Assembly (NCBI RefSeq): GCF_963676685.1 | Contig: NC_092352.1 | Span: 43,152,001 to 43,216,000 of the forward strand | DNA from: Mytilus edulis | Lineage: Eukaryota | DNA: 64,000 bases | Direction of reading: 5' to 3' | Part shown: positions 18,576-56,090 of the stretch, piece after piece | Numbering within the stretch: position 1 is the stretch's first letter | How the letters are laid out: every line of letters starts with the position of its first letter | Position numbers and translations under genes: made by a program | The notes under the pieces: model-generated | Told to the model about the DNA's origin: nothing | Database searches by the model: none | The model's input: the letters and a program-made list of their open reading frames with translations, nothing else

Positions 18576-21500
18576 TTATTTTTTCTTTCCAATTGGAACC
18601 TGTGGCCCACCTTGTATACCACCTGGAAGTATACCTCCGACCTGACCAGGTACACCACCAATGGCACCAGGTATACCACCAATAGCACCAGGAATACCTC
18701 CCTGAATAGCCCCTGGGACAACACCTGGAATCGTGCCAATAGTTTGTGGTTGTGTTCCAGGGCTGGCTTGATTACAAGCAATCTGTGTACACGACGCCTG
18801 AAATAAAAAACGAAATATTAATAAACATAAACACTTGTAGGACTAGGTCTATATGTAGCGTATCTCTAAGACACCGATCATTCATTTTGTTTGGGTATGA
18901 GGGTGGTTTTTATTTTAAATCATGGTTAGATTTAAAATTATTTCTTTGGAAAGGCCAATTTGGTTCAGAAGAGAAGTGAACAAAATAGTTTGTTTCCATT
19001 GAAAATTAGGTAAATAAAAAATAAGTTCAATATATAGTTTTAAAAAGTTTATTTTTTTGAAAAAATAGGGGTTTTTTTTATTTCAAAGAAGAAATAAAAG
19101 TGTTTGTCCAGGGAAAACAAACATTCCCCCTTTATAAAAAATGCATGACTTTTACCCATGTCTCCATGTTTTTTGGAGTAATAACTTCAATAGAATTTGA
19201 AAATAAAAATGGCTTTGCTCATTGTTGAAGGCCGTACGTGATCTATAGTTGTTAATTTCTGTGTCATTTTGGTCTCTTGTGGAGAGTTGTCTCATTGGCA
19301 ATCAAACCACATCTTCTTTTTCTATAATAACTCTTTAACACAAGATAGCACTTCCCCTTTAAATTTATATATACTATGTTTTTGGTTGAAAGCTTAAAAG
19401 CTTTGCTGCAATCATGTTAAAAAATTACTAAAAAAAAAAAAAAAATCATTCTTAGACAAAAAAAATATTAAAGAATTTTGAAATGAAATTTTAATACATG
19501 TATATGTATAGCATTTCGTTTGAGATTTCTAAGTTGTTACACTATCATTGCCAAGTCTGTACTTTTGACCTGACAAAATGATTGATTTATTATGAACCTA
19601 CCTGTCCGTTTTGTGTATTACAAGTACATCTATTACCGCAGGTGTCGATCTGTTTTGTTTGTCCAACTTGTATAAACTGATTCTGGGCCCTGCAGCCTGT
19701 TAAAAATATAGGAACATTGGTTCAAATTGATAATTTCATAAATCATTAGAATGAATATATCACTTTTCGTATTTCTTCAGAAAAGTGTTATTATATTCTA
19801 TGTTCAAGAAGTCTTAAATCTTATGTGAGAAGAAAGAAGAAGAACATGTAGAAGTATTTCAATTGCATCGTAATCATTAGATAATACATATAAAAAATGA
19901 AATTTTAAAAATTCTTTTTCAATATAAATGAGAGAATGTCAACCGAGACCGTAAGATTCGTGTCCACATAATATTTATGAAATAAATACACTTGAAGATA
20001 TAGTATTTACGTCAATAGTACCGGCAAAAAATGGCATACAGAAGGCAACATACAGTTCTTCACCATTTTTATTTAATTTGACATAACAGTTGTTCTTAAC
20101 AATTCAAAATATTTATAACAATTGTGATATTCACATAAACTGTGGCATTATATTTTTCTTCAATGGAATAAATTCAGCTTATCCACTTCTACGACGTAAA
20201 ATTGATCAACAATTCATTGTTTTTGGTTTTATAAATATTATAAAAAAGGGGCAAAAAATACCAGAGGGACATTCAAACTCATAAATCGAAAATAAACTGA
20301 CCACGCTATGACTAAAAAAGAAAAAGACAAACAGACAAGCAAAAGTACACAAAACACAGCATAGAAAAATAAATACTAGTAAGCAAAACGAACTCCACCA
20401 AAAACTGGCGGTGATCTCAGGTGCTCCTAAAGGGTACGCAGATCCTGCTCCACATGTGGAACCCGTCGTGTTGATCATAAATCTGACTTACCAGGAATAC
20501 ATTGACATGGGAGGACTGGAATCCATGTAGGACATATATAAGGCAGACCCACGTTACTTCTGTAAACACATTGTTGTCCAATTCCACATCCTCTGTAATA
20601 TAACAATACATTATATAACTATATTTATTTAATTTTCGTTTCTTTCGTAGTCATTTTGTTTAGTTTTCAATGATAGTCTTCATCCGAAAAATGCAGTCCA
20701 TCCCCGTAATAGATCGCTCCTTCAAAGAGTAATGGTAAATCAGCGGAATATAACAACTGAATTATTCGGGTTATGATACATGTAATCTTGTTTGTTTTGG
20801 CATTGATTTGAAGGCCCCCAGTCCTGTCACAATTATTTCCTCTTAAATTATCAGAAAAAAATGGTAAATAATATTAACTTCCTCCTGACAAAAATAATTA
20901 TAAAATTGTAAAAGGTACTACTGTTTGACAATAATTAATAATAAACTATTATGACTAAACTACAATTTACTGGAATAAACAAACCATGTCTTATATCTTT
21001 TTCTACTAGTTCTTTTGAATATTTTTTTTGGAAGGAACAGCAGAAAACTATTTTTTTTAATGAAGATTCTAACATTTTCTATTAATTTAAATTACACTAA
21101 GAATATATTAGCCTTGAAAAAAACATCTTAGATATTGTGGCAATTCTTATTGCTGTTGTAATTCTATTTATGTATCAACGGAGATGTTGAAAACATCTAA
21201 GGGTCAAAATACTATTTTGTATGTGTATTGATGACAGAATTAAACACAAATAGGTGCATACAGAACCTTGGATTTAAAAAAAAAATAAAGTTATATAAAG
21301 TGTTATCGTTTTCATAAAGAAGGGAAAAAATGATCATAAGAAAAGTTTGGAGAGGACGTAGTCCTCAAAACAGTCATAAAATCAATTAAAAGAAAAAATA
21401 ATTTTACTAGGGAAACTTGAATCGTTAATTTCTTTTTCAAACAGTTTCAGTTTCGCGTTATCCTATTGGCTTTTATGTTGCAAAAATAACAAATTTGTAC

Positions 21501-21934
21501 ATCTTATAACCAACAAGTATCATGAAAAAAAGACGGAATTAGTTTACTTTTACAGGACTACAATGATAGGTTACGTACCTTACGTGACAACTGTTTGGAT
21601 TACCAACACTTTGTTGAATAAACTGTTGATTTTGTGCAAAATTATTTACTCCATTAAATCCTTGCTGTCCAAATTGTCCTGGAATTTGATTCTGAAATCC
21701 ATTTTGGCCTATTATTCCTTGCTGGCCAAATTGATTAGGAAACTGTCCTTGTTGACCAAATTGCTGGCCAGGAAATTGTCCTTGCTGTCCAAATTGCTGG
21801 TTTTGAAATTGACCTTGTTGTCCAAATTGTTGACCTGGAAATTGTCCTTGTTGGCCTGGAAACTGTCCTTGTTGTCCAAATTGCTGTGCATTTAAGCCAC
21901 AAACGCAATAGACAAAAACGAAAATGGGTATCAT
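18576..21934 (-). CDS. Gene A: secreted Gln/Gly/Phe-rich protein with 12-Cys (FOLN-like + pacifastin/VWC-like) module and Gly/Ile/Pro-rich tail, ~257 aa
   Basis: Exons 21934-21579, 20592-20492, 19696-19602 and 18797-18576; all GT-AG, phases 2/1/0, open frame. Signal peptide, then (GQQGQFP)n, then SCHVRGCGIGQQCVYRSNVGLPYICPTWIPVLPCQCIPGCRAQNQFIQVGQTKQIDTCGNRCTCNTQNGQASCTQIAC, then a (GGIPGAI)n tail ending IGKKK. TATATAA at 21986-21980. Confidence 0.9.
19215..19325 (+). repeat. Representative copy of a dispersed short interspersed repeat
   Basis: cattgttgaaggccgtacg...gagttgtctcattggcaatc.taccacatcttct. Other copies at ~1105, 6130, 12945(-), 24380, 44790(-), 52505, 56355(-), 56655(-) and 62075. 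Confidence 0.7.
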
Positions 21935-23584
21935 GTTTCTACGAAAATTGAAAATGAATGAAGAAATACCTTGATTAGCTTATATACCGATTTTGGGTTA
22001 AAATGATGTGTAATATGTTTGTATGGGAAGAAACACGTCACAACTGTCAGAAAATGTGACAATTTGATGATTTGAGATATGGACAGTTAACGATATGTAC
22101 AAGATTTTTATCGCCAATAGCATTCAATTAATCATAGATTTTCTCCGGGTATGTTTTTTCGTCATCTTCAATTATATAAATATTAACACCTTCTTATAAA
22201 ATATTAGGTCAGGTCGTTAGTAATTAGTAATGCATTACGAATTATTTACCCCCTAAATATGCAGTCTAATCAGTATTGAAATGCAAACTTAAAGAGTACG
22301 TGTTTTTCTAGTCTAAACATTTTTTTTTAAATAAGGGGATAACAAACACCTTGACTCGGATTAATTTGGCTGTTTGATTTTCATAAAATTTTGACAAAAT
22401 ATTTGCTTTGACCCTTTGGCAAACAAAGAAAAATTTCATAATACTTTAACCACAAACTTGATCGAAAAATGTCATTAGATATATAGCTGTTTGGCAAACA
22501 CTAATTTTGACCATTGAGAAGCTGAGTATTTCTTTAACAAAAGAACAGGATTTAAACATTCATCGAACTTTTATAGAGTTATCTCCCTGTAGTGTTATGT
22601 ATCTAAATTAATAATGCTGATGGCTCTTTCATATGAAAAGGAAGTGCAAACCGTTCTATTAATCGTTAAGAATGTTGTTCTTTAGTCTGCATTCCTAGCC
22701 AGGGCATGTTTTCTTTTCAGTTCAGTTCAGTTTCAATGATATCATAACAAGCATTTAGAAAATCACGTGTTTATGCTATGAAATTGGAAAGAGTCCTTTT
22801 ATTAAGTTACAGTGCTTATATGACAACATTGTGTACCCTTTAAATGTGTGTATTGAATAAAATCACGTATTTAATATGAAGCGTAGTTTAGTTAAAATAA
22901 ATATTTTCAAATGAACTGAACTCAAATGTATTTCCAAAAACAAAAAATCCGGAATGACTGACAAATCAAGAAAGCATTCAGGTATATATATACATTCATT
23001 TTTATGGTAAAATTCTTTACAAAGCACTAACATGTCGGCATTCACCTCAAAAGCTAAAAAAAACTTTAAACAGACTTATTAAGAAGGGATATAGTTACAA
23101 TACTGTTATCAGGTCATTAAAGATGATATATTTTGGCTTTAATATTGATTCACTTATAGGGTCTTTGCATCTGAAATAAGCATATTTATTCTAAAACCAG
23201 TTGTTGGCATAATACGGGTTATATTATTCTCATATATTTCATGATGGCAGGATACTAACGCCCTAACGGAAAGGATTGTGCTTGAAATTCATATGACAGA
23301 ACATAATATTCCAACCAGTTTATTAAGTAATTGAGTTACTAAGTAATGGAGCTGGCATGTCAGTAACTGCTAGTAGTCCTTTGTTAATTTATGTATTAAT
23401 AAATAAATTTGGTGAATTTACTGTCTTCTGATTGGTTAAAATAATTAGCTTTATTTTCAATGTTATCAATTTTTATGGCGACACGCCCACTCTAACGTTG
23501 TGTATTCATACGCAAACATCTGTGTACGTTGTTATTCGTATCAATATATATCTTTGAGCCTTATTTTTGATAGAAATTTATTTA

Positions 23585-23743
23585 TAATGAATGGCAATAA
23601 TTTATTTTGAATTTATTGAACCATAAAATTAATTTTTGACTCTTCACATTTAACATAATCCGCTTCGCGGATTATTCAATGTGAAGAGTCAAAAATTAAT
23701 TTTATGGTTCAATAAATTTAAAATAAATAACAGCCATTCATTA
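23585..23743. repeat. Long near-perfect inverted repeat (hairpin, ~78-bp arms, TTC loop)
   Basis: taatgaatggc...gactcttcacatt..ataatccgc TTC gcggattat..aatgtgaagagtc...gccattcatta; loop at 23664-23666. Confidence 0.85.
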
Positions 23744-29700: not shown

Positions 29701-31905
29701 GTTCTAAATTGTTACAATAAGATTGATTGATTGGTGTTTGTCTTACGCCGCCTTAGCATAAAAAGGCTATATTGCGGCGAGAGCTAATTCATTTAAAATA
29801 AGAGACAATTATGTGATGATATAATCATTTATAACAGAATAAAAAAAGCGGTTTACCGAATCAAAGGTATAGTTTTCTTCTCTATACTTCCACGGTCTTT
29901 ACTTTTGTAAATTATGTATTTGTCATCTGATAGCTAAATGGATTAAGTGGTGATTCTTAAATTTTTAGAATTGCTTTGTTACATGACTTAACAAAGTGTT
30001 CCGACTGTAAACGAGCCGCTCCTTCGAAGCGTTGCATCTTTATTTATTTCTAGTGCAAATTTAAATTAGAATATAAATCAGCAAGTTTTTTCGGTATAAC
30101 AGGAAAAACTTCTAACCTTTGAAAAGTCAGTATTGTTAAGAACGCACATTTCGAAAAATTTAGAGCCCGGATATCTCGGTTCACAGTAAAACATATTTGA
30201 GCCACATATACAAATATTCTTTACCAGATGGCTATTTTTCATTTCCGTATTTAATCTGTTGAATCATTTGTGCAACTTTTATCAAACTTGGTGTTATAAT
30301 GCCTTTGTGATAAAGAAGACCTCTTATGACTAGAAGTCACTGTAAAAGGTAAAGGTCACATCAGCACATGATTTGAGTTACTGCAATTTGTATGATATAC
30401 TTTGAACCATATATTCAACTATAACCAAATGTACACAGAGAATGAGTCTTGATAAAACAAGACCATTTACAATATTGGTTAGTAGGTCAAAGGTCAAAAT
30501 CACAGTACCTATGAAGTGACTTAAAATTTTCAATCTTATTTCTCTCCAGACAATGGCATTTTAGCCGTTAATTAGATCTTAACTACTATATTTGGTGGAT
30601 CGATAAGATGTGTCCCCTAAAATTTGGGAAGTTGCTTGATAAAAGGTCTAGGTCAAGGTTAAAGAACCAATCGAAACTTAACTTTTGTAATAATATTAAA
30701 CATCGACTTTAGACTTTAAAAAAAAAATATCTGTTGTACTTCGGTTAATGCACCAATGTCTACCAATGGTGCTTCTGTAATAATGCATTTAGAATGATAA
30801 GCAGAAAATGGAGTAATAAAAGTGTAAGCTTGTTTTGCTTGCCTTCTTTTCAATAAATTCATAACGTTTATATATATGTACATTCAAACATTTACACAAA
30901 GTTACTTTGCTATAACAGAAATACAGTATATAATATAGCTCTGCGTTTGCTATAATTGTGCAATGTTCAGGTTGTATATTATACTTAAGAAACTTCAAAT
31001 CGCTTAATAGTCCTGAACATGCATGAAATATTCGCAACTGGACATTAAGCAACCAACTATTAATCAAATCGCCTAGCTTCAGGTTCTACGCATAAATAAA
31101 GGCTTTAAAATGAATGCTTTGTAAGAAGGTCTCGTGATTTTGTGATGTGTAAGTACAGTTTTCTTAAGTTTAACGATTTATTAATTTAGCAATAAAGGTG
31201 TAGGTCACTGAGAAAAAGATATAAAAAAAAATGTACTTATATTTTTGTTTATACACTTGTTCTTGATGTATGTCTTATACCTAAAGCCTTTTTCAGCCTT
31301 ATCATTAAAAAGTATTGACTATAAATTATAAGATGTACCAGGTAATAGAATTAGGAATGCCATATATGGTAATATCGGTAGGAAGTTAAAAAAAAGTGAC
31401 AAAGAAAGGCATGAGGTCATACCACAAGTGACAATTGTCGTAATGAATGACAAGATACTTGTCATTTCATTGTAAAACAGGTATGTTAATGAGGACAAAC
31501 AATGCCTAGGTGTTCAAACAAGAGGTTTAATATGGGAACATTTCTTTTGAAAATTGTCAAACGGACGATAAAGTTTTTAAAACATATATTTCTATTATCA
31601 ATGTAACCTCATATAAACATTTAAAGTATTGGGTTTTTATCAAATATCTTGAATGATGGGCAAAAAAACGAACGAGTTGAAGATATCCCAATTGGTGTCT
31701 GACATCCATTATCAAGCTTGAACAATCCTAATTCTTGTGTATTACCTATCATATATGAACAACTGGGTTGCGTATGCGTTAACTCAGGATGTGACGTCTA
31801 TTCTCAGAAACATGATTCTAATTTTACGTATACAGTATTGAGGCTTTATAAATAAAAAGTATGCAAGATTAATATCATTATCAAAAGTAAACACACACAA
31901 CTAAC

Positions 31906-34221
31906 ATGGCAAAACTTTTTCTTTTACCAATAATTGCCAGTGTTTTAGGACTTTGTTCGGGAACATTTTTCTTTCATCGTCATCAGTACCAGTATCGGAA
32001 GCAATATCATATGGGAACCAGTGTCTACACGCCTCCAGCAAGATTTTATCCGGGTCGTCTGCCACCAACTTTTATACACACTCGTATTTTGATACCGTAT
32101 GATTCTCCTAGTTTTGAAGAAAGAAATCCTGTCCCTACAGCTATATTTCCAGTCGGTACCGTGTATCCATCTTCCTATCGCCAGTTTCCAAATCCACTTG
32201 CAAATCTGAATACGTATGATCTACCACCATGGAAACCAACAGCTCCAGTTTTCAATAATGGCATTGCAGGTCTAGATGTAGATAATGTTATTCCGCAATT
32301 TAAACCAACTCTTAATCAAGATCCACAGATACCAACAAGAGAATGGATAGCAGAAGTTCCAATTATTCAACAAGTTCCAACTATTCAACAAATTCCAACT
32401 ATTCAACAAGTTCCAACTGTTCCAGACACTAACAATGACAATAACTTTCTTCCTGATGTTCCATCATTTGTAGTACCTGTTGTAGTACCAGACCCCCCAC
32501 AAGTTCCTATCTTTCCCGGAGCTGACATCAATAATAACCAGAAGGGAGACGTCTACATCGAACAGCAAACAACAACTCAGCTTCCACCAATTATTGTAGA
32601 AAGACCAAAGTCATGTCAGGAAACGTAAGATTCTTCCTTTTTTTCTTTATATTTTTTTTATTGCTGAAACATTTATATTACATGTCTACACATTTTTTTC
32701 ATCAGTTATAAATAAATTCTACACTAAGGAAAATATCACTTACACTAGTTTCAGAAGGCTTCGCTATTTATTTGTATCAACCGCTGGTTTAGTGTGGCTG
32801 CGTTTGTACTTTGGGTTTCCGAATGCACCATCTGCTTAGTATCTTGAATTAACATACATATTAATTTATCATTAAATCTTATTAAAAATAATGTATGAGT
32901 ACTTTAACAAAAAGTTGCAGCTTCTACGCCTAGATTCACACCAGATTTACCGTTTAGGATTATATTGTCCTTGGATTTGATGCTTACAAGTGTTTCTATG
33001 TGCTTAGTTTTAAGATGATATTACGAAAATTATTTTATAATTTCATTGCAGTACTATCAAACGTACGCAGTTTTATTCAATAGTTGTTTGACTTTTTATT
33101 TTTATAATTTCAGAGGGTGCGGCCTTGGAAGTGAATGTGTATATAATAACAGTTATATCTGCCCTAAGGATGTCAAAGATATTCCATGTCGCTGCCAAAG
33201 AGGTAAACGCATTATACAGTAAAATTCTTCCTTATTTTAAAAAACTGAAACGTTTGGTTATATGCAAGAATCTTTACTAAAAATTACAATTGAGCGGCAG
33301 CATTGCGTTGAAAAGTCATTAACTGACAATATATCTTCCAATAGGAACAAATATATGTAACACTAGGAGTATTTAAACGGAACTTAATATTTGAAATAAG
33401 TTTAAAATTACATTTTTAAAATCTACGAAATTGCACATATCGACAAAAAGAAGATTTTATATTGTAGTAGTTTATTTTGTGTATATGATATAATAAATTT
33501 GGAATTTTGTAAAATCATTCCTTTTGTGGTTATTTTGCTGCAGCTTTAAATGTTGGTTTTTCTTATATTTTGTTTTTTACTTTCAGGTTGTCGCTTACAG
33601 CATACATTCATACCACTCGGAGTTACTACGATTATTGACCCATGTGGAAATATGTGTTCATGCAACAGTTTATTTGGAGGGGTAAGTTTCCATTTTGAAT
33701 GGTTTTCATTTACCGAAATTTGCACTCGTGAGAGGTCGCTGTTGTCTTAACGGTGGTTACTGCTATTGGTATTTACGCAAAACGCGCGGTTCGTCCAAAA
33801 AAGACTCATCAGTCACGCTCGAATTAAAAAAAGTTAAAAAGGCCAAATAGAGTACTGCATGGATTATAATAAGCCGACCTTTCATAAGTCAAAAAATAAA
33901 TAAAATAACAAAACAAAACTGTCTTGACTTATTGGTATCTATCGTTCATAAGTCTTAATATTTTTTCTGTTTGTTTTTTTTACTATATCTATTACAATTT
34001 ATAAATATTTCAATAATTGTTTTCAGGCTAATTGCACAGATATTCCATGTAATCCAAAACAACCATCTATTAACAACCCTACAACTGGCTTAATAATAGA
34101 ACCTGTACCGACTGGACCATCAGATGCTGGTCCCCTGCGCGGAGATTTCCCTGGATATTTACAACGTATGGAATATCCTCTACCAATACCAGGTCAACAA
34201 GGAGGAAATTTCCCTGTTTAA
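31906..34221 (+). CDS. Gene B: secreted Pro-rich protein with 12-Cys module and RGD motif, ~365 aa
   Basis: Exons 31906-32624, 33114-33202, 33587-33681 and 34027-34221; GT-AG, phases 2/1/0. Signal peptide, Tyr/His-rich start, Pro-rich region with (QQ[VI]PTI) repeats, then SCQETGCGLGSECVYNNSYICPKDVKDIPCRCQRGCRLQHTFIPLGVTTIIDPCGNMCSCNSLFGGANCTDIPC, then DAGPLRGDFP. TATAAATA at 31848-31855. Confidence 0.9.
33770..33850 (-). repeat. Degenerate retrozyme/hammerhead remnant in intron 3 of gene B
   Basis: tacgcaaaacgcgcggttcgtccaaaaaagactcatcagtcacgctc matches the 630-675 motif. CTGATGA is kept on the minus strand, but GAAA and the cleavage triplet are mutated. Confidence 0.6.
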
Positions 34222-41940: not shown

Positions 41941-44900
41941 ATGAAATTTTATTTTGTTTCGTGTTTTGTTTTTGTGTTTTTATCAGTGTTGTGTGATGGT
42001 AAAGGACGGAATGAAATCCAGAGGAAAAAACGAGTCAAACATATTAGTACAAAAGTATATAGACCTTCAAAGGATATGTATGCGAAATATCTTAACATGA
42101 ATCCACCTAGGTTTCCACCTACGATTATCCATACACGATTACGTGTACCGTTTGACGGGCCACCACCAAAGTACAAATGGAAACCAAAATCCTTACACGT
42201 GAATAGGGATAAAATGCGGGGTAAAATGTTGAACCCTGTGGGTAGAAATACAAAAAAGGTCAAATGGTATCCGTCTACAAATCCAGTTTTAACCGGTAAA
42301 AAAATTGGCATAGGAAATCCAACGAAACATGTAAAGAGGAAAACATACCGAACAACAAAACAATTCAATCCGTCAACTAAATCAGTATATAGATACACTG
42401 CTGCTCCAAGAAAACCTCATCCAATCAGAGCAAGGATTACTTATCCAGCAAAGGTAATGCCAATTCGTACAACAACAACAAAACCACCAAGATCAAAGTC
42501 AATAAATCTGTTTAATCCTATAAGTGACTATGTTCTTTCTACAGAACCTACAACAACAAAAGTATCTGCTTTTATTCCTGTGCCTATTTTGAATGAGGTT
42601 ATCATTAATTTTGCAAAACCAGTGTCGCAAACTACTACTATGAAACCTATTCCAATTGCCAAGAACAAACCAGTACATTCAGTATTTGAAAGTACAACAC
42701 CNNNNNNNNNNNNNNNNNNNNNNNNNNNNNNNNNNNNNNNNNNNNNNNNNNNNNNNNNNNNNNNNNNNNNNNNNNNNNNNNNNNNNNNNNNNNNNNNNNN
42801 NTACCACAACGCCAATAACTAACACTACCTCGACGCAGACCTTAACAACAGAAAAAGTCTTGAATAACTCTACATCTCCCTCAAATAGTTCTACAGAATT
42901 GTTCAACATTAATCCGGAAGCGACTACGAATGAAACAACACAAGAACTATTTTCTACAACTCGTATCGCTTCCAGTACTCCGACAACGACTTGTTTCGAA
43001 ATGATTACGCCTCCAACGACAAATATTTCGACAACGAATGATTCTGAAATAATTACGACTTCTACGATCGCGGCATCTACAAAAAAAACCAACTGATTCC
43101 GAAATAAGTAAAACTTCAACAATAGCCACGACGACAACTAGTTCAACAACGACTGATTCCGAAATAATTACCACTCCAACGATAGCTCCAATGAAAAATA
43201 CTTCGACAACGAATGATTCCGAAATGATTACGACTCCAACAAAAGCCACAACGACAACTATGCCAGCAAAGACTGATTCCGAAATTATTACCACTCCAAT
43301 GATAGCTTCAACTACAAATACTTCAATAAGGAACGATTCCGAAACTAGTACGACTCCAACCACAGTGGCTACGACAACAACCCTTAGGGAGCCAACTACA
43401 GAGGTGAAAATTACTTTTCCAGAACACATGATTGGAAGGTTTCCATCTTCTACAATGAAACCTGCGGTCAGGGTACCACACAATTGCATCACTATGTAAG
43501 TAACTTTTGCTTCGAGAAAAAAATCATGGCCTATCTTAAATAGGCAATAAATAAAAAACAATCATGACTGTTTACAAATCTTTAGATGTTTCGGAATACT
43601 AGGGATTACCTTTTTGGAGTTTTTCAATACTCTCTAATTTCGTACTTTATTTGGTATCTATGTTGAATTTATTGTTCATATAGATGTATCTATATGTCTG
43701 AAGCAGGATGAAAGGTATCGTATGTCAAAAGTGTTGCAACTATTACGAATTCACTTTTTATTTCATATAGTAATACATTAGTTTTCATTATGTTTGTTCT
43801 GTCTGTGTATTTGCTATAACCAAACTTTTTGTTTTTGTTTCGCAAATTAAGAATTCTTATTTATAAAACATTTTCGAAACTACTTTTGGGTCCGATTATG
43901 ATGATAATTTTATGTTTAATGCTATACTCACAAATGTGTACAGTTTTTATGGTTATAATGACATATGTTTATAATCAGCCATTACTGAGAAAATCATAAT
44001 TATGTCAGTACAATATCGAAATTAAGTGTCATTTATTCCTATATAGATTTGTCATATATATAATTTTTTTCAGGGCAGAAATTCATATTTGTCTTTACGC
44101 GATGATAATTATAAATTATAGATAAATTAAATGACAATGCAAGTAACTGTAAGCAGTTCTGTGTTTAATGGTAAACAATCATTCAATTTGGACAGTATAA
44201 TTCTTTAAACAAATGTGTTTTTATATCAAATAATAGGAGAATTTCCAATAGGTTAAACACTTTTTACCTAAGACTGTATATTTATGATAATTTTTTAACC
44301 ACAAATATCGTCCAAATTACAGCTACATTCGATTTCTTTCTACTCAAAAAGTATAACGATATTATTGTAAAAAATTAATCATCAATACTATATATATTCA
44401 GTAAATTTTTATTTCAAAGAAAACATATACTTTATACAGCCAGAACGATATCCTAAAAGAAAATATAAAGTTGAAGATGGTTATGTATTTTTTATAGTCT
44501 ATATATAGGTCTTAAAATTAACATGTATTTATCATTTTCCAATTTTCTATTTAAGGGGGTGTCCGCAAGGCAGAGTGTGTTTATCAGATCAAAACGATAT
44601 TTGTTTTAAAGGCGAAAAAGCAGGTTCATGTTTTTTGCAAACCTGGTAAGTATAATTGGTTGGCTTTTTTGTTGTTTGATCTTCTGTAAACAAATCTTTA
44701 TCAAAGTATAAATAATGTGGTTGATTGGTTGTTGGTTGCTTAGCGTCCAGTGGCAAATATTTCATGTATAATCATGGAGATACATAAATAAGACGATGTG
44801 ATATGTTTGCCAATGAGACAACTCTCCTTCCAAGTCACAATGTATAAAAAAAAAATATAACAATTATAAGATGAAGTATGGTCTTCAACACGGAACCTTG

Positions 44901-47143
44901 ACTCACCCCAAACAGCAAGCTATAAAGGGCCAACATGTCACGTTTTCATTCTTTCACCGTAAACATTTGTCTCGAAAATTCAACGAGAGCTGGCACAAAC
45001 CCAAATGTAGAACGTATGTGTTGGAATGTTCCTTTAATATCTTTCGTCTCTCTTATATTTTTATGAACATTCAAATAATGGAGATCGTAAAATTTTAATA
45101 ACACATCTTTTTAATGAAATTACATGTATCACCTTATGACATGAAAACGAATAAAATTTAGGGTTTTAATCTACTAAATTTATTTTTATAGGATGTAAGC
45201 ATGAGAATATGTTAATTGAATTAGGACAGCCTGTTGTTATGGACCGATGTGGCAATTTGTGTTACTGTGGCTCAGGCGGATTGGTAAGTACATAAACACA
45301 TTATTTTAACATGATATAACTTCTTACTAAGCAAGAAATGTCAAAAACCTACTTTTGGGAAATAAATTAAAACACACTGATTTTTTAACCACATCATTGT
45401 TTTAAAAATAAGACAAATCCATTTATTTATAAAATTGCAATGCATAAGTTAATACATTTGTAAATGTTTTAATATGGTATAGAGCGATTTCAACAATAAA
45501 AATCAAACATTCTGGGTTTTTTAAAATAAATTTGATATGATAATTATTCCAAACAAATGAATTGATATATGATTTGTAAATGCCAGTTACGAATGTCTTA
45601 TCAATGAATACCTGGTCCATTCTACCAAACCTCGGTAATTTCGTGTACTTGCGATGAAAAGGAAAATTTACATTATCAAGATCAATGCTTACACTTCAAC
45701 TACAATATGCGATTAATAGGACTTCGTTTTTTTTTTTAACGTTTTAATTAAACCGATGATTGAGCGGGTAAGAATACCAATCCAAATTACATCCATTTAG
45801 TGGAAGCTAGATTTATATTTTAAATAAGGAAACTAAACTTGAATTATAAGCCATAGGTCTGTACTTCCTTTTACTAAGTACTCAGAGTACAAAACTTGTG
45901 TTCGAAACCCCAAATCCAGTATTTTGATTTTTTGATTTCTGAGTTTAAGTGCGATAGCCATAATCTTAATTGTTATGACCTCGAGAGCTAGTATGCGTAT
46001 ACTATCTCCATATTTTCGTGTTTAATATGAAAAGTATGAAACATATAAAATCACAAAAACACTGAACTCGATGAAAATTCAAAACTGAAAATCCCTTATC
46101 AAATGGCAATTTCAAAAGATAAAACACGTCAAACAAATTGACAACAACTGGCATATTCCTGACTTGGTACAGGCATTTTCTTATGCGCTAAACCTCTCAC
46201 TTGTATGACAGTCACATCAAATTTCATCGCCCTATAAATAGAAACCTGAATATTCTAGCATCGCAAAGTGTTTGCATTTAAGTTAAAACTTTAATGTCTC
46301 CTTTATAAGTTAATACTTGAATGTCTACAGTTTTCAGTTATTTGGATTAAACCTCTTTGTACATACATAACTTGTATAACACTACATCATCAAAGTTCTG
46401 AATAATATTGGAGGGTAATAAAGTTTTGTAACACTTTTATGAACGTATAAATAGAAAGTACTTCTATTTAAGTAATGATAAACAACATATGAAACGTATG
46501 ACACACGTCAAAATTGAATGACATTTGACAAAAACCTTTGATCTAAAAAAAATATTAATGGTCTAGCCCATATGGGGTGAAAAGTAGAATAACAAAAATA
46601 TCGAACTGCAAGGAAAATTCAAATCGCGAAAATTAATGGCAAATTCTAAAGCTGAAACACACAAAACGAATGGAAAACAACTGTCGTATTCATGGCTTGG
46701 TACAGGCATTTCCTTATTTATAAAATTAATTATGGTCATGGTTTACTTTTCTTCTTTTTCCTGACCAGTTTGTTTGAGTGTTGATATTTGTTTCACTTTA
46801 TGTGTTGCGTAAGTTTATTAAGAATAAGTCAGTACCTTTTATTATTCTTTTTCAGACTGCATGTACGAAAATACCATGTGAAAAGAGCAGATATGTAATA
46901 ACAACACCAAACCCTTTTAAACCGGTCGAGTTTAAACCGGATGTTAAGGATAGAGGACCGACAAGGGGAGACTCGCCTTATTTCTATGTTGACAATACGA
47001 AGTCAAAGTCAATAAAAGTTCATGGATTACATTTCCCGGATCAATTGTTGGCGTGGTTGTCGCCGTTTTCGTCAGAATTCAGGGAAAGTCTTCCTTCTTC
47101 TGGAATAAAGGCAATTTCGATTGAAAATCTATTCAAAACTTGA
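41941..47143 (+). CDS. Gene C: secreted Lys/Arg-rich plus Thr-rich mucin-like protein with 12-Cys module and RGDS motif (two frameshifts and a gap in this assembly; possible pseudogene)
   Basis: Exons 41941-43495 (100-N gap; +1 shift at A-run 43081-43088), 44556-44645 (+1 shift at T-run 44631-44636), 45192-45283 and 46856-47143. Signal peptide, RKKR, basic domain, 20-aa DSEIITTPT repeats, then NCITMGCPQGRVCLSDQNDICFKGEKAGSC[FC]KPGCKHENMLIELGQPVVMDRCGNLCYCGSGGLTACTKIPC, then DRGPTRGDSP. Confidence 0.8.
42702..42801. other. Assembly gap (100 N) inside the Thr-rich repeat of gene C exon 1
   Basis: Run of exactly 100 N, a typical placeholder of unknown true size. Confidence 0.99.
43040..43390 (+). 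repeat. 60-bp (20-aa) coding tandem repeat, mucin-like
   Basis: gattc[ct]gaa (DSE) at 43040, 43095, 43155, 43215, 43275 and 43335. Confidence 0.85.
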
Positions 47144-48576: not shown

Positions 48577-48927
48577 GTAACTGGCATTTACAGATCATAT
48601 GTCAATTCATTTGTTTGGAATAATTATCATATCAAATGTATTTTTTTTAAAACCAAGAATGTTTGATTTTTATTGTTGAAATCGCTCTATACCATATTAA
48701 AACATTTACAAATGAATCGACTTATGCATTGCAATTTTATAAATAAATGGATTTGTCTTATTTTTAAAACAATGATGTGGTTAAAAATGTGTTTTTAATT
48801 TATTTCCCTGAAGTAGGATTTTGACATTTCTTGCTTAGTAAGAAGTTATATCATATTAAAATAATTTGTTTATGTACTTACCAATCCGCCTGAGCCACAG
48901 TAACACAAATTGCCACATCGGTCCATA
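48577..48927 (-). pseudogene. Inverted partial duplicate of gene C exon 3 and the start of intron 3
   Basis: Reverse complement of ~45238-45590: MDRCGNLCYCGSGGL|gtaagt plus ~300 bp of intron, with few differences. Confidence 0.9.
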
Positions 48928-49074
48928 TCCCTATACTATCCAAGAAAGATGAGTTTTGAGAAATTCACCCTCCTCTCATTTGGTATTAACATAAAAAAAA
49001 AGAGGGGGACGATGAAAACATACCATCTTTATGCTGGATATTTTATTTTCACAAAAACGTTATCAAGAACTGTA

Positions 49075-49235: not shown

Positions 49236-49399
49236 TTTTGCGAAGTTTCGTATATAAGCTCGTTTGAGGTGAATCTCATGTGGAATTTTTTTCACGAGAA
49301 TTTCGAGTGAGATTCATGTGAAAATAATGTGAGCAAAATTTGCCTGTGTATTGTGTTTATCAACATGTTCAGATTGTAATAACTTTATATGGTGATGGA

Positions 49400-49638
49400 A
49401 AGGAGCTACTCATTTTTAAGGTCGGACTGAATTCACATTGTATCACACAGTGCTGAAAAACGGCTACTCATTATCAAGTTCAGATTGACCTCAAATTTCA
49501 AATAGTGATCAAAGATCTGTCGCTACTCATTATCAAGATAAAATTTAATTCACATGGTGATAGAATATCTCTGCTCTATTTGAGGGCCTCAATGAAATTT
49601 ATACTAGTTCTAATTGAGTTACCCTCTTTAAATAAAGA

Positions 49639-49671
<33 letters not shown>

Positions 49672-51800
49672 GATTATTATTGTTATTATTACTCATTATC
49701 AAGGTCATCTTGACTTCACATGGTGAAAGAACGTCGCTACTCATTATCAAGGTCAGACTGACTTCACATGGTGATAGAATGTCTCTACTCATTATCAAGG
49801 TCAGAGTGACTTCACATGGTGATAGAACGTCGCTACTCATTATAAAGCTCAGATTGTCTTTCATGGTGATAGAATGTCACTACTTATTAACAAGGTCAGA
49901 TTGACTATACATGGTGATAGAACGTCGCTACTCATTATAAAGCTCAGATTGTCTTTCATGGTGATAGAATGCCACTACTTATTAACAAGGTCAGATTGAC
50001 TATACATGGTGATAGAACGTCGCTACTCATTATAAAGCTCAGCTTGTCTTTCATGGTGATAGAATGTCACTACTTATTATCAAGGTCAGATTGACTATAC
50101 ATGGTGATAGAACGTCGCTACTCATTATAAAGCTCAGATTGTCTTTCATGGTGATAGAATGTCACTACTTATTATCAAGGTCAGATTGACTATACATGGT
50201 GATAGAACGTCGCTACTCATTATAAAGCTCAGATTGTCTTTCATGGTGATAGAATGTCACTACTTATTATCAAGGTCAGATTGACTTCACATGGTGATAG
50301 AATGTCACTACTTATTATCAAGGTCAGATTGGCTATACATGGTGATAGAACGTCGCTACTCATTATGAAGCTCAGATTGTATTTCATGGTGATAGATTGT
50401 CACTACTTATTATCAAGGTCAGATTGACTATACATGGTGATAGAATGTCGCTACTCATTGCAAGGTCAGATTGACTTCAAATGGTGATAGAATGTCTCTA
50501 CTCATTATCATGGTCAGATTGACTTCAAATGGTGATAGAATGTCGCTACTCATTATCAAGGTCAGATTGGCTTCACATGGTGATAGAATGATGCTACTAA
50601 TTATCAAGGTCAGATTGGCTTTCATGGTGATAGAACGTTGCTACTCATTATGAAGCTCAGATTATATTTCATGGTGATAGATTGTCACTACTAACTATCA
50701 AGGTCACATTGACTTCACATGGTGATAGAATGTCGATACTCATTGCAAGGTCAGATAGACTTCAAATGGTGATAGAATGTCGCTACTCATTATCAAGGTC
50801 AGATTGGCTTCACATGGTGATAGAATGTCCCTACTAATTATCAAGGTCAGATTGGCTTTCATGGTGATAGACTGATGCTACTTATTATCAAGGTCAGATT
50901 GACTATACATGTTGATAGAACGTTGCTTCTCCTTATCAATATCAGATTGACGTCACATGGTGATAGAATGTCGCTACTTATTGCAAGGTCAGATTGATTT
51001 CAAATGGTGATAGAATGCCGCTACTCATTATCAAGGTCAGATTGGCTTCCCATGGTAATAGAATGTCGCTACTAATTATCAAGGTCAGATTGGATTTCAT
51101 GGTGATAGACTGATGCTACTTATTATCAAGGTCAGATTGACTATACATGGTGATAGAACATTGCTTCTCCTTATCAAGGTCAGAGTGACTTCACATGGTG
51201 ATAGAATGTCGCTATTTATTATCAAGGTCAGACTGGCTTTACATGGTGATAGAATATCGCTACTCATTGCAAGTACAGATTGACTTCAAATAGTGATAGA
51301 ATGTCGCTACTCATTATCAAGGTCAGATTGGCTTGACATGGTGATAGAATATCGCTACTTATTATCAAGGTTAGATTGACTTCAAATGGTGATAGTATGT
51401 CGCCTTCTTATTATCAAGGTCAGATTGGCTTTCATGGTGATACACTTATGCTACTAATTATCAAGGTCAGATTGGCTTCCATGGTGATAGACTGTTGCTA
51501 CTTATTATGAAGCTCAGATTGGCTTTCATGGTGATAGATTGTTGCTACTTATTATCAAGGTCAGATTGGCTTTCATGGTGATAGAATGTCGCTACTAGTT
51601 ATCAAGGTCAGATTGGCTTTCATGGTAATAGACTGATGCTACTTATTATCAAGGTCAGTTTGACTATACATGGTGACAGAATGTTGCTTCTCATTATCAA
51701 GGTCAGAGTGACTTCACATGGTGAACGAACGTCATTTCTCATTATTTAAATCAGATTTACCTCAAATCGTGATAGAATGTCGCTACTCATTATTTAGTAT
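49400..51800. repeat. 47/48-bp tandem repeat array (~45 units)
   Basis: Consensus ctcattatcaaggtcagattgacttcacatggtgatagaatgtcgcta, with alternating 47+48-bp variants at ~49840-50280. Confidence 0.95.
49575..49690 (+). mobile_element. Probable 5'-truncated LINE 3' end with (ATT)n tail inserted into the 48-bp array
   Basis: gagggcctcaa...ttgagttaccctct-ttaaataaag-(att)n: self-complementary gaggg/ccctc, AATAAA and a microsatellite tail. It interrupts a satellite unit. Confidence 0.55.
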
Positions 51801-53563: not shown

Positions 53564-53571
53564 TGACGTCA
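53564..53571. promoter_or_regulatory. Perfect CRE palindrome TGACGTCA upstream of the gene D TATA-like box
   Basis: aaTGACGTCAtt at 53562-53573; atatata at ~53603-53609; ATG at 53700. Confidence 0.5.
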
Positions 53572-53699
53572 TTGCATGCAGCGTGGGAGAACGAAAATTG
53601 ACATATATACAAAGTTCCTGCAATACACAAACTTAGAAAATAAAAGGACTAGAACACTTAGTTAGTTAGGAAAAGAACTTCTACGTGAAACTTACTATA

Positions 53700-56090
53700 A
53701 TGTTGGGATATATTTTTGTTCTCGTGATTGAATTACTTACAGTATGCAACGGAAGAATTTGGTCCGGAAGACCTTTGTATGTTATTGAACGCTTTGCTCT
53801 ACCAGATATCACTAAAAGTGCCCAGTTTCCTCTGAAAGGAGCTGGAGCAGGTGTTCCATTTAAAATCACACCACTTGTGTCATTATTAAACACAAAACCA
53901 TCGGAAAGTGCAGCACTTTTGGTTAAATCTGAGGATCCAAAATTAGGGGTTACGGAACCATTACCAAGACTAGTGAAGGCAATACCAACAGAACATAAAG
54001 TGAAGATCAAGTCACTTCACAAGCCTTGTCATAAAACGTAAGTTGTCTATAAGTTAAAATACAAAAAAGTCTTTGGAAACAAATATTTATCCTGTAAATA
54101 TAAGCCCTGCTTCAGATGGAATTCATGCATAAAAATATCTGAACTTCGTTTTATAATAAGAGGAAAACATACAATACGAAGATACAATTAGAAATCAGAA
54201 ATCGACGAAGGGCATAAACTTAGGTATAGAAGCAATTTACATGCGAGCTTATATGTACTAAACAGTTGCGTTTCATTCTCTATATTAAGCATTTTGTTTA
54301 ACATGTTTTGTATTGTATGGTTTTTTTTATTCAACATGAACATCATCGATAATTTATGTATATCAACTTGCTTTAGTAAGTATAGCACAACATAAACTTA
54401 CAAGTATAGTAACAGTTTTGTAATTTGTTCGTTTTCTCGACATATTAATATGAGCTTTGTAGCAACGAAGGGATATGCTTATTCCCATACTAGTTAACAA
54501 GAATCTGATTTTTGATAACCATTGTATGTTTTCTTCACCAGGGGTTGTTCGAAAGGTTCACAGTGTGTTTACGAAAGAGTGTGGATGTGCCCTACTTATA
54601 TCCCAGATCTTAACTGTTATTGTCGACCAGGTAATAATTTATATTACAATAGGTATTGAAAAAATCAGTCTTTTTTACTTTTTTCTGCGTCTGTTTATCG
54701 TACTGTTTTTTTTTATGTGTTATTCGATTTTATAAATTTTTATTTTTTTATTTTTCATTTTTTCAATTTATTGTCATGACCATGGTCTTTTACGATAGAT
54801 GACAGGCATTTTTCGGCTTAATATCAAATTAAGACGAAAACAGAAGACAACATATCTACCAGACTCGCACAAAACATCATAATATAAAATACTAATCTAA
54901 TTCATCTCTGATGTTTTTAATTCATTGACGTTTTTTTTACTCTTTATAGGTTGTGCCGTTGGTAACACCTTTATACCAATGGGAAAGGCACTGACCATAG
55001 ACGATTGTGGAAACAGGTGTGCTTGTCAAGATCAAAGTGGCGAGGTACTATCTTAGAATGTGCTTTGTCTTGTCTGCATGTTGTGTGTTTTAGTGTTGTG
55101 TTTATGTTATTTTATATTCGATAAAAAGCTCTTAAGAGCTTATGTTTGTATTGTTATTTGTGAACCGAATCAAAATAAAACTTTCGTATTCGTATATTCG
55201 TTGTAAGGAATTATCAAAGATCCATCAATTTCAATTAACTAATATGCATTAAAATGTATATGTATAGACATTAAACAATACTATATGTAAATGATGATAA
55301 TTAACAGGAGCTGTTTAGTTTCTTGTCTTGCAGATCTTCTTATTTTGTAAAACAAATCTGATTTACCGTAGTTGCAAAGGAAAATATATAATTTCGGAGT
55401 TCTGTCTTCTAAATGAAGAAATTATGTAAAAAAGTTAAGAAGACTAGCAAAATTGTTATATGCAACGAAATGATGATAAATGCACTCAAACAGTGTTGGA
55501 ATCATAACAATCCGTTTCCATATTATATTCAATAGCTAGCTGCAAAACCAACCAGGTTTTAGACATACGTTTCTTTGGGAAAAGTGTTTTACTAAGTTAG
55601 GAATATGACCGTCGTTTTCAGCCGTTCCGTTATTAGAGCGTTTTATTTTGTCAGTTTTTATGGAGTTTGGTGTTTTGTTATTACATTCCTACCAATCATT
55701 ATTATAAGTATGTGTTTGTAATAAAAAAACATTGTTGTCAAATTGCTTTATTTTTTTAATTTATTTAAAAAATTATATACACTGAATTAATAAGAATATT
55801 TCTTTCTTTTTTAGGCTGTATGTACTAAACTTGAATGCGTGAAAATGTCTGACAAAAAAGAGGCAAAAATGGATTCCCTTCTCAAATATTTGAAAAAGTT
55901 AGTGAAAATAAATCTGAAGAACGAAGAAAAATCTACAACTCCGAAACCACTAAAGACAAGTGCCAGTGGAAATGCTCTACAACGTAAATCAACATCCAAT
56001 ATAATAAACATGTCAAGACGAATCGATCTCAATACAGAAACAAGATTTCCGTACAGCCCTCATAGACCATTTTATGTACGAACATTATGA
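53700..56090 (+). CDS. Gene D: secreted basic protein with 12-Cys module, ~265 aa
   Basis: Exons 53700-54037, 54542-54630, 54950-55044 and 55815-56090; GT-AG, phases 2/1/0. Signal peptide MLGYIFVLVIELLTVCNG, then PCHKTGCSKGSQCVYERVWMCPTYIPDLNCYCRPGCAVGNTFIPMGKALTIDDCGNRCACQDQSGEAVCTKLEC and a Lys-rich tail. Confidence 0.9.

What the first reader, a model, noticed from the sequence alone, without database searches (positions are those of the whole stretch)
18576..56090. Hidden four-gene family: one conserved 12-Cys cassette attached to four chemically different low-complexity arms
Seen: hand-splicing gives four secreted proteins with the same exon architecture (introns phase 2/1/0; exon 2 = 89-101 nt; exon 3 = 92-95 nt). 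They share the pattern C-x3-G-C-x2-G-x2-C-x(7,11)-C-x8-C-x-C-x2-G-C-x9-G-x5-D-x-CGN-x-C-x-C-x(3,4)-G-x3-CT-x3-C. The flanks differ strongly: A is Q/G/F repeats plus a GIPGA tail; B is Pro-rich; C is K/R-rich plus Thr-rich mucin; D is short and basic. The cassette does not appear whole in the ORF track because it is split across all four exons. Inference: a modular extracellular-matrix toolkit (shell matrix, periostracum, byssus or mucus) in which a common disulfide module mediates assembly or protease resistance while the arms tune material properties. I do not recognise a named family for the full cassette.
Basis: partly seen in the sequence, partly recalled or inferred. Interest (0 to 1): 0.85.

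Follow-up and report, generated by a model that had tools for sequence, protein, structure and literature searches.

The report
Bivalve 12-cysteine matrix protein gene cluster
Four neighbouring blue-mussel genes (plus a fifth elsewhere on the chromosome) encode secreted, mostly disordered proteins that share one compact 12-cysteine domain; this family is so far seen only in bivalves, is uncharacterised and has no known function.

Summary
The window is Mytilus edulis chromosome DNA. It holds four 4-exon genes (A on the minus strand; B, C and D on the plus strand) with intron phases 2/1/0 and one shared 12-Cys cassette.

- **Gene models:** My B and D models equal RefSeq proteins XP_071130071.1 and XP_071130074.1.
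- **Gene C:** it is not intact as assembled. It has the N gap, with about 700 residues of mucin arm missing relative to the M. coruscus orthologue. It also has two single-base frame breaks in homopolymer runs (A8 and T6).
- **Family size and range:** a fifth paralogue with the same phases lies 21.8 Mb away. HMMER against 1.84 billion proteins finds 24 relatives, and every named one is a bivalve (mussels, scallops, oysters, a unionid, a clam).
- **Fold:** AlphaFold2 folds the cassette confidently (pLDDT 91-97) and leaves the arms disordered. No Pfam family reaches its threshold. The C-terminal six-Cys half weakly resembles FnI, VWF E/TILa, VWC and extended-hairpin pacifastin-like domains. The N-terminal half matches nothing.
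- **Function:** inferred only, as an extracellular matrix or mucin toolkit with a folded docking domain. A matrix-anchored protease inhibitor is the main rival.
- **Missing evidence:** no RNA evidence could be obtained.

The parts
18576..21934 (-). Gene A. Exons 21934-21579, 20592-20492, 19696-19602 and 18797-18576; 257 aa. It has a Q/G/F-rich N-arm, the 12-Cys cassette and a G/P/I-rich tail.
Evidence: The cassette appears identical throughout to M. coruscus CAC5385300.1 (P0014) in a global alignment, and the arms differ only by repeat indels and a few substitutions. AF2 on P0014 gives cassette pLDDT 91-95.
31906..34221 (+). Gene B. Exons 31906-32624, 33114-33202, 33587-33681 and 34027-34221; 365 aa. 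It has a Pro-rich arm, the cassette and a tail carrying GPLRGD.
   Evidence: The model is identical to XP_071130071.1 (P0001). Orthologues exist in four other Mytilus species.
41941..47143 (+). Gene C, mucin-like. Exon 1 is 41941-43495 and is interrupted by the N gap 42702-42801 and by a frame change at the A8 run 43081-43088. Exon 2 is 44556-44645 with a frame change at the T6 run 44631-44636. Exon 3 is 45192-45283 and exon 4 is 46856-47143.
   Evidence: Supported. tblastn of the M. coruscus orthologue P0024 (1353 aa) maps collinearly, with the frame changing at the two runs. Exon 4 is 95/95 identical to P0024.
42702..42801 (.). Assembly gap inside exon 1 of gene C. It was not filled.
   Evidence: The N run is shown. 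Its flanks correspond to orthologue residues up to 239 and from 942. Both sides therefore belong to one gene, but they are not contiguous and their relative frame cannot be known.
53700..56090 (+). Gene D. Exons 53700-54037, 54542-54630, 54950-55044 and 55815-56090; 265 aa. It has a short basic arm, the cassette and a basic tail that begins with a predicted long helix.
   Evidence: The model is identical to XP_071130074.1 (P0048). AF2 gives cassette pLDDT 92-97 and a helix at 185-212.
48577..48927 (-). Inverted partial copy of gene C. It holds the 3' half of exon 3 plus the start of intron 3, is 96% identical, and carries a stop in the copied reading frame.
   Evidence: Supported (E = 4.8e-5, one TAG; arms 45238-45590 and 48577-48927).

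Best explanation
**What it is**
- This is a tandem cluster of four paralogous genes of a small family, seen so far only in bivalves, in Mytilus edulis. A fifth member lies 21.8 Mb away on the same chromosome.
- Each gene encodes an N-terminal hydrophobic leader, a long intrinsically disordered low-complexity arm, one compact domain with 12 cysteines (probably six disulfides), and a short tail.
- The domain has two halves. The N-terminal six-Cys part has no detectable relatives. The C-terminal six-Cys part has the small three-stranded fold shared by fibronectin type I modules, the E/TILa module of von Willebrand factor and mucins, the first subdomain of VWC repeats, and pacifastin-like domains with an extended hairpin.

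**How the family arose**
- It grew by whole-gene duplication.
- Exon 1 (arm plus Cys1) and exon 4 (Cys11-12 plus tail) then diverged in place by repeat expansion and replacement. Exons 2 and 3 stayed under constraint.

**Inferred function (not shown)**
- These are extracellular matrix or mucus proteins. The folded domain would be the stable docking or assembly unit, and the arms would set material properties.
- B and C additionally offer a conserved GPxRGD cell-attachment motif.

**Gene C**
- As assembled it is broken. This more likely reflects errors near a contig end than decay.
For: **Shown**
- Gene models and phases. Models B and D are identical to RefSeq proteins.
- Consecutive M. coruscus accessions CAC5385300-303 correspond to A, B, C and D, so the cluster is conserved.
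- An exon-3 profile finds only these four genes plus one fragment with good scores in the 1.37-Gb genome.
- The fifth paralogue is at C9:64968008-64991005 with phases 2/1/0.
- phmmer against 1.84e9 representatives gives 24 hits. All named ones are bivalves: Mytilus, Ylistrum, Argopecten, Mizuhopecten, Saccostrea, Crassostrea, Sinanodonta and Mactra.
- The alignment has 11 invariant columns including most Cys.
- Two independent AF2 models give cassette pLDDT 91-97 and disordered arms.
- Both models return the same weak set of fold neighbours:
  - FnI: Z 3.8, rmsd 2.6 over 42 residues.
  - VWF E3 (6n29): Z 3.5, rmsd 2.4 over 39 residues.
  - Pacifastins: TM-score normalised to the target of 0.53-0.68.
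  - NELL2 VWC: Z 4.2, but rmsd 7.2.
- Sub-threshold Pfam hits fall on TILa, Pacifastin_I, VWC2L_C and VWC.
- B and C share an N-terminal motif at 38-39% identity over about 55 aa.
- GPxRGD is present in five Mytilus B orthologues, in C, and in two Saccostrea members.
- Orthologue conservation is highest in the cassette: no differences in A in the alignment, 92% in B, and 70/73 in D.
- C exon 4 is 95/95 identical to M. coruscus, which argues against long-standing decay of C.

**Inferred**
- Secretion, from the hydrophobic N-termini.
- The matrix role and the docking function.
Against: - There is no transcript, tissue or proteomic evidence.
- All fold matches have Z below 5 and Foldseek E of at least 0.15. 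Matches that weak can arise from a common arrangement alone.
- No Pfam model reaches its threshold.
- Disulfide connectivity could not be read from the models.
- The taxonomic range rests on a single-sequence phmmer search. A profile search might reach other molluscs.
- Gene C may really be a pseudogene in this individual, with two frame breaks.
- B carries two in-frame stops in a tail that is longer in other species.
Confidence: 0.55

Rival explanations
1. The cassette is a protease-inhibitor module anchored in the matrix. Its C-terminal half would be a pacifastin-like domain of the extended-hairpin ('ancestral') type, presenting a canonical reactive loop between Cys11 and Cys12. The loop would read Cys-Thr-P1-P1'-x-Cys, with P1 = Lys in C, D and the fifth paralogue. 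The disordered arms would tether it in a secreted matrix.
For: - The second half reads C-x17-C-G-N-x-C-x-C-x(3,4)-G-x3-C-T-x3-C.
- PMC13388995 describes an 'ancestral' pacifastin-like class with these features: a 13-20-residue Cys1-Cys2 hairpin rich in G and F/Y, an Asn in the Cys2-Cys3 motif, a structural Gly between Cys4 and Cys5, and a Cys5-x-P1-P1'-x-Cys6 loop.
- In that paper Mollusca is the second largest group, Lys dominates P1 in molluscs, and the domains are often embedded in matrix proteins.
- Foldseek TM-score normalised to solved pacifastins is 0.53-0.68, rmsd 1.7-3.3, and up to 42% identity over 31 columns.
- Pfam Pacifastin_I is hit below threshold by 6 of 29 members, best E = 9e-4.
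- P1-equivalent residues across the family include K, M, Y and F.
Against: - The Pfam threshold is not met.
- VIA-align gives only Z 2.1.
- There is an extra residue between Cys and Asn compared with C-N-x-C.
- A and B would have P1 = Gln and Asp, which to my knowledge are not usual inhibitor residues.
- The Cys11-Cys12 loop is no more variable than other loops.
- The family's accessions and genus names are absent from that paper's held supplements.
- The same fold signal fits FnI, TILa and VWC equally well.
- The N-terminal six-Cys half is unexplained by this reading.
Confidence: 0.2
2. The cassette is a divergent VWC (chordin-like) repeat. The proteins would then act as extracellular binders or modulators of BMP/TGF-beta-type ligands rather than as structural matrix.
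For: - UniProt names the M. coruscus A and D orthologues 'VWFC domain-containing'.
- Feature-based atlas neighbours are VWC / VWC2L / NELL2 clusters, but with scores of only 0.75-0.77.
- NELL2 VWC is the top VIA-align row (Z 4.2).
- CCN3 and collagen IIA VWC structures appear among the Foldseek rows.
Against: - Pfam VWC is hit by only 1 of 29 members, at E = 0.01.
- The cassette has C-x3-C-x-C instead of C-x2-C-x-C and no CC-x2-C motif of the second VWC subdomain. This is visible directly; the canonical motifs are quoted from my own knowledge of the family.
- The NELL2 superposition has rmsd 7.2 Å.
- Atlas scores below 0.8 are common for shuffled proteins, according to the tool's own note.
Confidence: 0.08
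3. Gene C is a genuine pseudogene in this M. edulis individual. On this reading the two frame breaks are real, and the locus holds three working genes plus a decaying mucin gene.
For: - There are two independent single-base frame changes.
- A rearranged inverted fragment of its exon 3 lies 3 kb downstream.
- Neighbour B also carries nonsense changes in its tail.
- No second copy of exon 2 exists in the assembly to contradict the reading.
Against: - Both breaks sit in homopolymer runs (A8, T6) next to an assembly gap in a repetitive mucin exon. Consensus errors are to be expected in such places.
- Exon 4 is 95/95 identical in protein to M. coruscus and exon 3 is 85% identical. That is unlikely after relaxed constraint.
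- All splice sites are intact.
Confidence: 0.3

Closest known systems
E / TILa module of von Willebrand factor and gel-forming mucin D assemblies (Pfam PF12714)
   Same: It is a six-Cys small beta module. It gives the best sub-threshold Pfam hit on exon 3 and on whole proteins (8 of 29 members). The VWF E3 module (6n29_B 1197-1239) superposes on cassette residues 142-182 with Z 3.5 and rmsd 2.4 Å. MUC2 and VWF TIL'E' regions recur in both Foldseek lists. Gene C is itself a mucin-like protein.
   Different: Scores are 14-18 bits against a 27-bit threshold. The family has no VWD, C8 or full TIL domain, and the N-terminal half has 6 rather than 10 Cys. It is a single-copy domain next to disordered arms.
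Pacifastin-like domain, extended-hairpin 'ancestral' class (PF05375; PMC13388995)
   Same: Both have a six-Cys scaffold, an Asn after the second Cys, a Gly before the fifth Cys, and a Cys-Thr-x3-Cys end. The 17-residue first loop is rich in F and G. TM-score normalised to solved pacifastins is 0.53-0.68. Both have a molluscan distribution and a matrix context.
   Different: The cassette has C-G-N-x-C rather than C-N-x-C. The Pfam threshold is not met. Inhibitory activity and disulfide pairing are untested. A and B have unusual P1-equivalent residues. An extra N-terminal six-Cys half is fused to it.
VWC / chordin-like cysteine-rich repeat (PF00093) and single-VWC proteins of invertebrates
   Same: They are extracellular, and the first-subdomain topology is similar. 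UniProt's automatic naming of two orthologues points here, and NELL2, CCN3 and collagen IIA VWC structures are among the neighbours.
   Different: The cassette has 12 Cys rather than 10, no CC-x2-C motif and C-x3-C-x-C spacing. Only 1 of 29 members touches the Pfam model, at E = 0.01.
Fibronectin type I module
   Same: It gives the best compact superposition: Z 3.3-3.8, rmsd 2.4-2.7 Å over 39-43 residues of the C-terminal half.
   Different: FnI has four Cys and a different motif. There is no sequence-level signal.
Vertebrate SIBLING/SCPP gene cluster (an analogy of how it works, not homology; from my own knowledge)
   Same: Both are tandemly clustered secreted matrix genes with conserved exon-intron phases, rapidly diverging disordered low-complexity sequence, and RGD in some members.
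   Different: SIBLINGs have no disulfide-rich domain. There is no sequence relation, and a role of the mussel genes in mineralised tissue is unproven.

Membership tests
VWC (PF00093) | Pfam gathering score reached | tested here: not met
   Only 1 of 29 family members hits, at E = 0.01. None of the window's proteins reaches the threshold.
VWC (PF00093) | Ten Cys with C-x2-C-x-C and a C-terminal CC-x2-C motif (from my own knowledge of the family) | tested here: not met
   The cassette has 12 Cys, C-x3-C-x-C spacing and no adjacent Cys pair.
TILa / VWF E module (PF12714) | Pfam gathering score (27 bits) | tested here: not met
   The best scores are 13.7-18 bits, and 8 of 29 members hit at E <= 1.
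TILa / VWF E module (PF12714) | Fold superposes on a solved E module | tested here: inconclusive
   6n29_B gives Z 3.5 and rmsd 2.4 Å over 39 residues. By the tool's own caution, Z below 5 may reflect only a common arrangement.
Pacifastin (PF05375) | Pfam gathering score (27.9 bits) | tested here: not met
   D scores 14.3 bits. 6 of 29 members hit, with best E = 9e-4.
Pacifastin, 'ancestral' class of PMC13388995 | Six-Cys scaffold with a 13-20-residue first loop, Asn after Cys2, Gly between Cys4 and Cys5, and four residues between Cys5 and Cys6 | tested here: met
   Cys7-12 read C-x17-C-G-N-x-C-x-C-x(3,4)-G-x3-C-T-x3-C. The criteria are quoted. One extra residue (Gly) stands between Cys and Asn.
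Pacifastin, 'ancestral' class of PMC13388995 | TM-score >= 0.5 to a pacifastin structure | tested here: inconclusive
   TM-score normalised to the target is 0.53-0.68 for 7sgq_E, 7snc, 7sao, 7snd_B, 7sap_A and 4djz. The Foldseek E-values are 0.6-3 and VIA-align gives Z 2.1.
Pacifastin | Disulfides 1-4, 2-6 and 3-5, and serine-protease inhibition | not testable with these tools
   Model coordinates are not exposed, and no assay is possible.
EGF-like domain | Six Cys with C-x-C followed by an 8-12-residue loop; Pfam or profile match | tested here: not met
   There is no EGF family hit at E <= 1 in any of the 29 members. UniProt's 'EGF-like domain-containing' name for the M. galloprovincialis B orthologue is consistent with a short pattern hit only.

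The most novel reading that the evidence does not exclude
The 12-Cys cassette is a bivalve-specific composite domain: a new six-Cys N-terminal half fused to an extended-hairpin pacifastin/VWC-type half. It would define a fast-evolving matrix gene cluster comparable to the vertebrate SIBLING cluster. In that cluster the Lys-P1 members (C, D and the fifth paralogue) would act as protease inhibitors tethered in a secreted material, and the RGD members (B, C) would link that material to cells.
Probability: 0.12. Interest if true: 0.65.

Novelty: new variant of a known kind. Interest (0 to 1): 0.45.

Why it matters
Bivalve shells, periostracum, ligament, byssus and mucus are built from secreted proteins. 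Most of these are lineage-specific and lack recognisable domains.

This work defines a conserved family with these properties:
- It has a confidently folding six-disulfide domain.
- Its range covers Pteriomorphia, Palaeoheterodonta and Imparidentia.
- Its clustered genes show how disordered arms diverge in place around a constrained core.

That gives proteomics and in-situ studies a concrete target. It also gives structural biology a small, expressible domain whose binding or inhibitory activity can be tested. Without expression data it remains an uncharacterised family of moderate interest.

Tried and rejected
- **RNA evidence:** Junctions, tissue and the two homopolymer lengths in gene C stay untested.
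- **Genomic context in other bivalves:** Intron positions and clustering in scallops and oysters could not be read from DNA. The only hints are runs of consecutive accessions and contiguous ORFs (P0015, P0019, P0020) that read exon 2 and exon 3 without an intron.
- **Word-index protein searches:** the cassette region of B and a 13-member alignment found nothing new. The paralogues share too few exact 5-mers.
- **PDB profile search:** a profile of 29 members against PDB sequences gave 0 hits at E <= 10.
- **Literature:** four full-text searches for 24 accession, UniProt and LOC identifiers of family members gave 0 papers. Shell-proteome papers mentioning VWC concern other proteins.
- **Tree:** a maximum-likelihood tree of 72 cassette columns was unresolved, with 15 of 20 inner branches open. 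No orthology beyond Mytilus is claimed.
- **Reactive-loop test:** column entropy of the Cys11-Cys12 loop (2.4-2.9 bits) is no higher than in other loops. This gives no support for a hypervariable reactive site.
- **Promoters:** 1.5-kb upstream regions of A-D share no BLAST-level similarity.
- **Second copy of C exon 2:** a search of the genome found only the window's own copy.
- **Atlas feature searches:** scores of 0.75-0.77 are leads only.
- **Chance or artefact as an explanation of the cassette:** rejected on the E-values.
- **Byssus-specific role:** judged unlikely because the family is present in oysters, a unionid and Mactra, whose adults to my knowledge make no byssus.
- **Joined sequences:** Exons were searched by reference. 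Whole proteins were represented by database entries that proved identical (B, D) or orthologous (A, C).
- **The N gap:** it was not filled.

Full report
**Source and layout**

The window is G000:C9:43152001-43216000 of a 1.37-Gb genome. The best protein match names it Mytilus edulis. GC content is 32%, and there is one N run at 42702-42801.

A six-frame motif scan found the cassette pieces exactly four times, plus one fragment. Reading the DNA at each boundary gave four 4-exon models. All have GT..AG introns with phases 2, 1 and 0.
- Exon 2 is 101, 89, 90 and 89 nt in A-D.
- Exon 3 is 95, 95, 92 and 95 nt.
- The coordinates are listed under the report's parts.

**Check of the observation**

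- My model of B is identical to XP_071130071.1. My model of D, starting at the ATG at 53700, is identical to XP_071130074.1. Independent annotation therefore uses the same junctions.
- The A cassette shows no difference from M. coruscus CAC5385300.1 in a global alignment.
- The paralogues are clearly homologous. phmmer with B gives E = 6.7e-17, 2.1e-14 and 3.4e-9 for the A, D and C lineages in a library of 1.84 billion proteins.

**The gap and gene C**

This was tested first, as asked.
- The frame before the gap does not continue after it. The gap length is arbitrary, so the frame cannot be judged from the window.
- tblastn of the 1353-aa M. coruscus C orthologue (P0024) places the left flank at residues 3-239 and the right flank at 942-1022. 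Both sides belong to the same gene, in order. About 700 residues of the Thr-rich arm are unrepresented.
- After the gap the alignment changes frame between 43081 and 43092, at an A8 run.
- In exon 2 a T6 run (44631-44636) separates '...C-F' from '(C)-K-P-G-C...' by one base, so the exon is 90 nt where its paralogues have 89.
- Gene C is therefore not an open gene as assembled.
- Three things make error or a very recent change more likely than old decay (my estimate is 0.3 for a true pseudogene). Both breaks are in homopolymers beside a gap. All splice sites are intact. Exon 4 is 95/95 identical to M. coruscus.
- No second copy of exon 2 exists in the assembly. Reads could not be consulted.

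**Family size and range**

- A profile of the four exon-3 peptides (A1) searched over the whole genome returned the four genes (E = 1.8e-16 to 9.1e-15) and an inverted fragment at window 48885-48953. Nothing else scored better than E = 0.66.
- phmmer revealed a fifth Mytilus member, P0027/P0037, whose accession XP_071133301.1 lies in the M. edulis RefSeq number range. It maps to C9:64968008-64991005 on the minus strand. Its junctions have the same phases 2/1/0.
- In M. coruscus the four orthologues carry consecutive accessions CAC5385300-303 in the order A, B, C, D, so the cluster predates the split between the Mytilus species.
- Across 1.84 billion representatives only 24 proteins score E <= 0.001. 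Those with names come from five Mytilus species, three scallops, Saccostrea and Crassostrea oysters, the unionid Sinanodonta and the clam Mactra. All are called uncharacterised or hypothetical.
- All share the same plan: a leader, a variable low-complexity arm, and the cassette near the C-terminus.
- Several contiguous ORFs from oyster-like contigs read exon 2 and exon 3 without interruption (P0015, P0019, P0020). This confirms that junction at the protein level. It also suggests that intron 2 is absent in those species.
- A tree of the cassette is unresolved.

**What the cassette is**

- Pfam gives only sub-threshold hits, all on the second half: TILa, VWC2L_C, Pacifastin_I and VWC. A PDB sequence-profile search is blank.
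- AlphaFold2 on D (alignment A2) and on the A orthologue (A4) both fold the cassette with pLDDT 91-97. They give the same strand layout and leave the arms below 50. D also has a confident helix directly after the cassette.
- Foldseek and VIA-align return the same neighbours for both models, none of them significant:
  - FnI modules: Z 3.3-3.8, rmsd 2.4-2.7 Å over about 40 residues.
  - The E3 module of VWF: Z 3.5.
  - MUC2 and VWF TIL'E' regions.
  - VWC of NELL2, CCN3 and collagen IIA.
  - Pacifastins: target-normalised TM-score 0.53-0.68, with up to 42% identity over 31 columns.
- All these matches cover model residues about 140-183, which is Cys6/7 to Cys12. The first half (Cys1-6) has no match.
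- C. gigas K1QNY2 lacks Cys1 and Cys3 together. This hints that the two are paired.
- A 2026 paper (PMC13388995) describes an 'ancestral' pacifastin-like class. Its features are a 13-20-residue first loop rich in Gly and Phe/Tyr, an Asn after Cys2, a Gly before Cys5 and a Cys5-x-P1-P1'-x-Cys6 loop. The class is abundant in Mollusca and often sits in matrix proteins.
- The second half of the cassette fits that description except for one extra Gly. However, the family's identifiers are not in that paper's held supplements.
- The putative reactive loop is no more variable than other loops.

**How the family evolved**

- Cys1 is encoded with the N-arm on exon 1, and Cys11-12 with the tail on exon 4. 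The phases are asymmetric. The cassette therefore cannot move as an exon module.
- B and C still share an N-terminal motif (38-39% identity over about 55 residues). They also share a GPxRGD motif in the tail. That motif recurs in all five Mytilus B orthologues and, upstream of the cassette, in two Saccostrea members. The motif had been noted by the scan as s1-836586.
- The picture is whole-gene duplication followed by turnover of low-complexity sequence in place.

**Mechanism**

- **Shown:** homology, architecture, a confident fold for the cassette, disorder of the arms, and stronger conservation of the cassette than of the arms between species.
- **Inferred:** secretion, a matrix or mucin role, and the cassette as the stable docking or assembly unit. 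Gene C's orthologue is a 1353-aa Thr-rich protein, which fits a mucin.
- The presence of the family in oysters, a unionid and a clam, whose adults to my knowledge make no byssus, argues against a byssus-specific role.
- The main rival is a tethered protease inhibitor (0.2). A BMP-binding VWC-like role is less likely (0.08).

**Limits**

- No transcript or tissue evidence was obtained.
- There is no genomic context for other bivalves.
- Disulfide pairing could not be read from the models.
- Literature searches by 24 identifiers were blank.
Exons were searched by reference, and database proteins stood in for whole models. Joined translations were made only inside local scripts.

**Verdict**

This is a real, conserved and uncharacterised family, seen so far only in bivalves. 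Its domain is a new variant within the FnI/TILa/VWC/pacifastin class of small disulfide modules. It is of moderate interest until expression or biochemistry is available.

Noticed in passing
window 34219-34413: Exon 4 of gene B ends at a stop codon (34219-34221) where M. trossulus, M. galloprovincialis, M. californianus and M. coruscus continue for about 67 more residues. The downstream frame is still about 90% like their tails but holds a second in-frame stop (34279-34281). This looks like a recent truncation of the B tail in this M. edulis assembly.
   Followed up: partly
window 45238-45590 and 48577-48927: A 96% inverted duplicate covers the 3' half of gene C exon 3 plus the start of intron 3. 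It lies 1.4 kb beyond the end of gene C, and the copied exon piece carries a TAG.
   Followed up: partly
G000:C9:64968008-64991005 (loci L013, L014, L015, L017): A fifth family member (XP_071133301.1, 586 aa, Q/N/G-rich arm) lies on the same chromosome 21.8 Mb away. It has identical intron phases and a 12.7-kb third intron.
   Followed up: yes
window 46856-47140: The C-terminal tail of gene C, including GPTRGD, is 95/95 identical in protein to M. coruscus. The arms of the same gene are only 57-83% identical. The constraint on a tail of unknown function is unusually strong.
   Followed up: no
window 35365-36352 and 49505-50653: Long tandem arrays between the genes give periodic ORFs on both strands (repeated 'CISTDVQLI'-type and 'SHGDRMSLLIIKVRL'-type peptides). 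They are probably satellites or minisatellites rather than genes.
   Followed up: no
window 21935-22054 (minus strand) and 31786-31905 (plus strand): The divergently oriented genes A and B both have a TGTGACGT (CRE-like) 8-mer about 105-115 nt upstream of the ATG, and a TATA-like box about 50-60 nt upstream. This could be chance in AT-rich DNA. There is no wider upstream similarity among A-D.
   Followed up: no
protein P0023 (Logan contig, not in the window): One database ORF of the oyster-like subgroup has Pro and Thr systematically replaced by Leu, Phe and Ile. This is as expected from an assembly of bisulfite-converted reads, so it is an artefact and not a variant.
   Followed up: no
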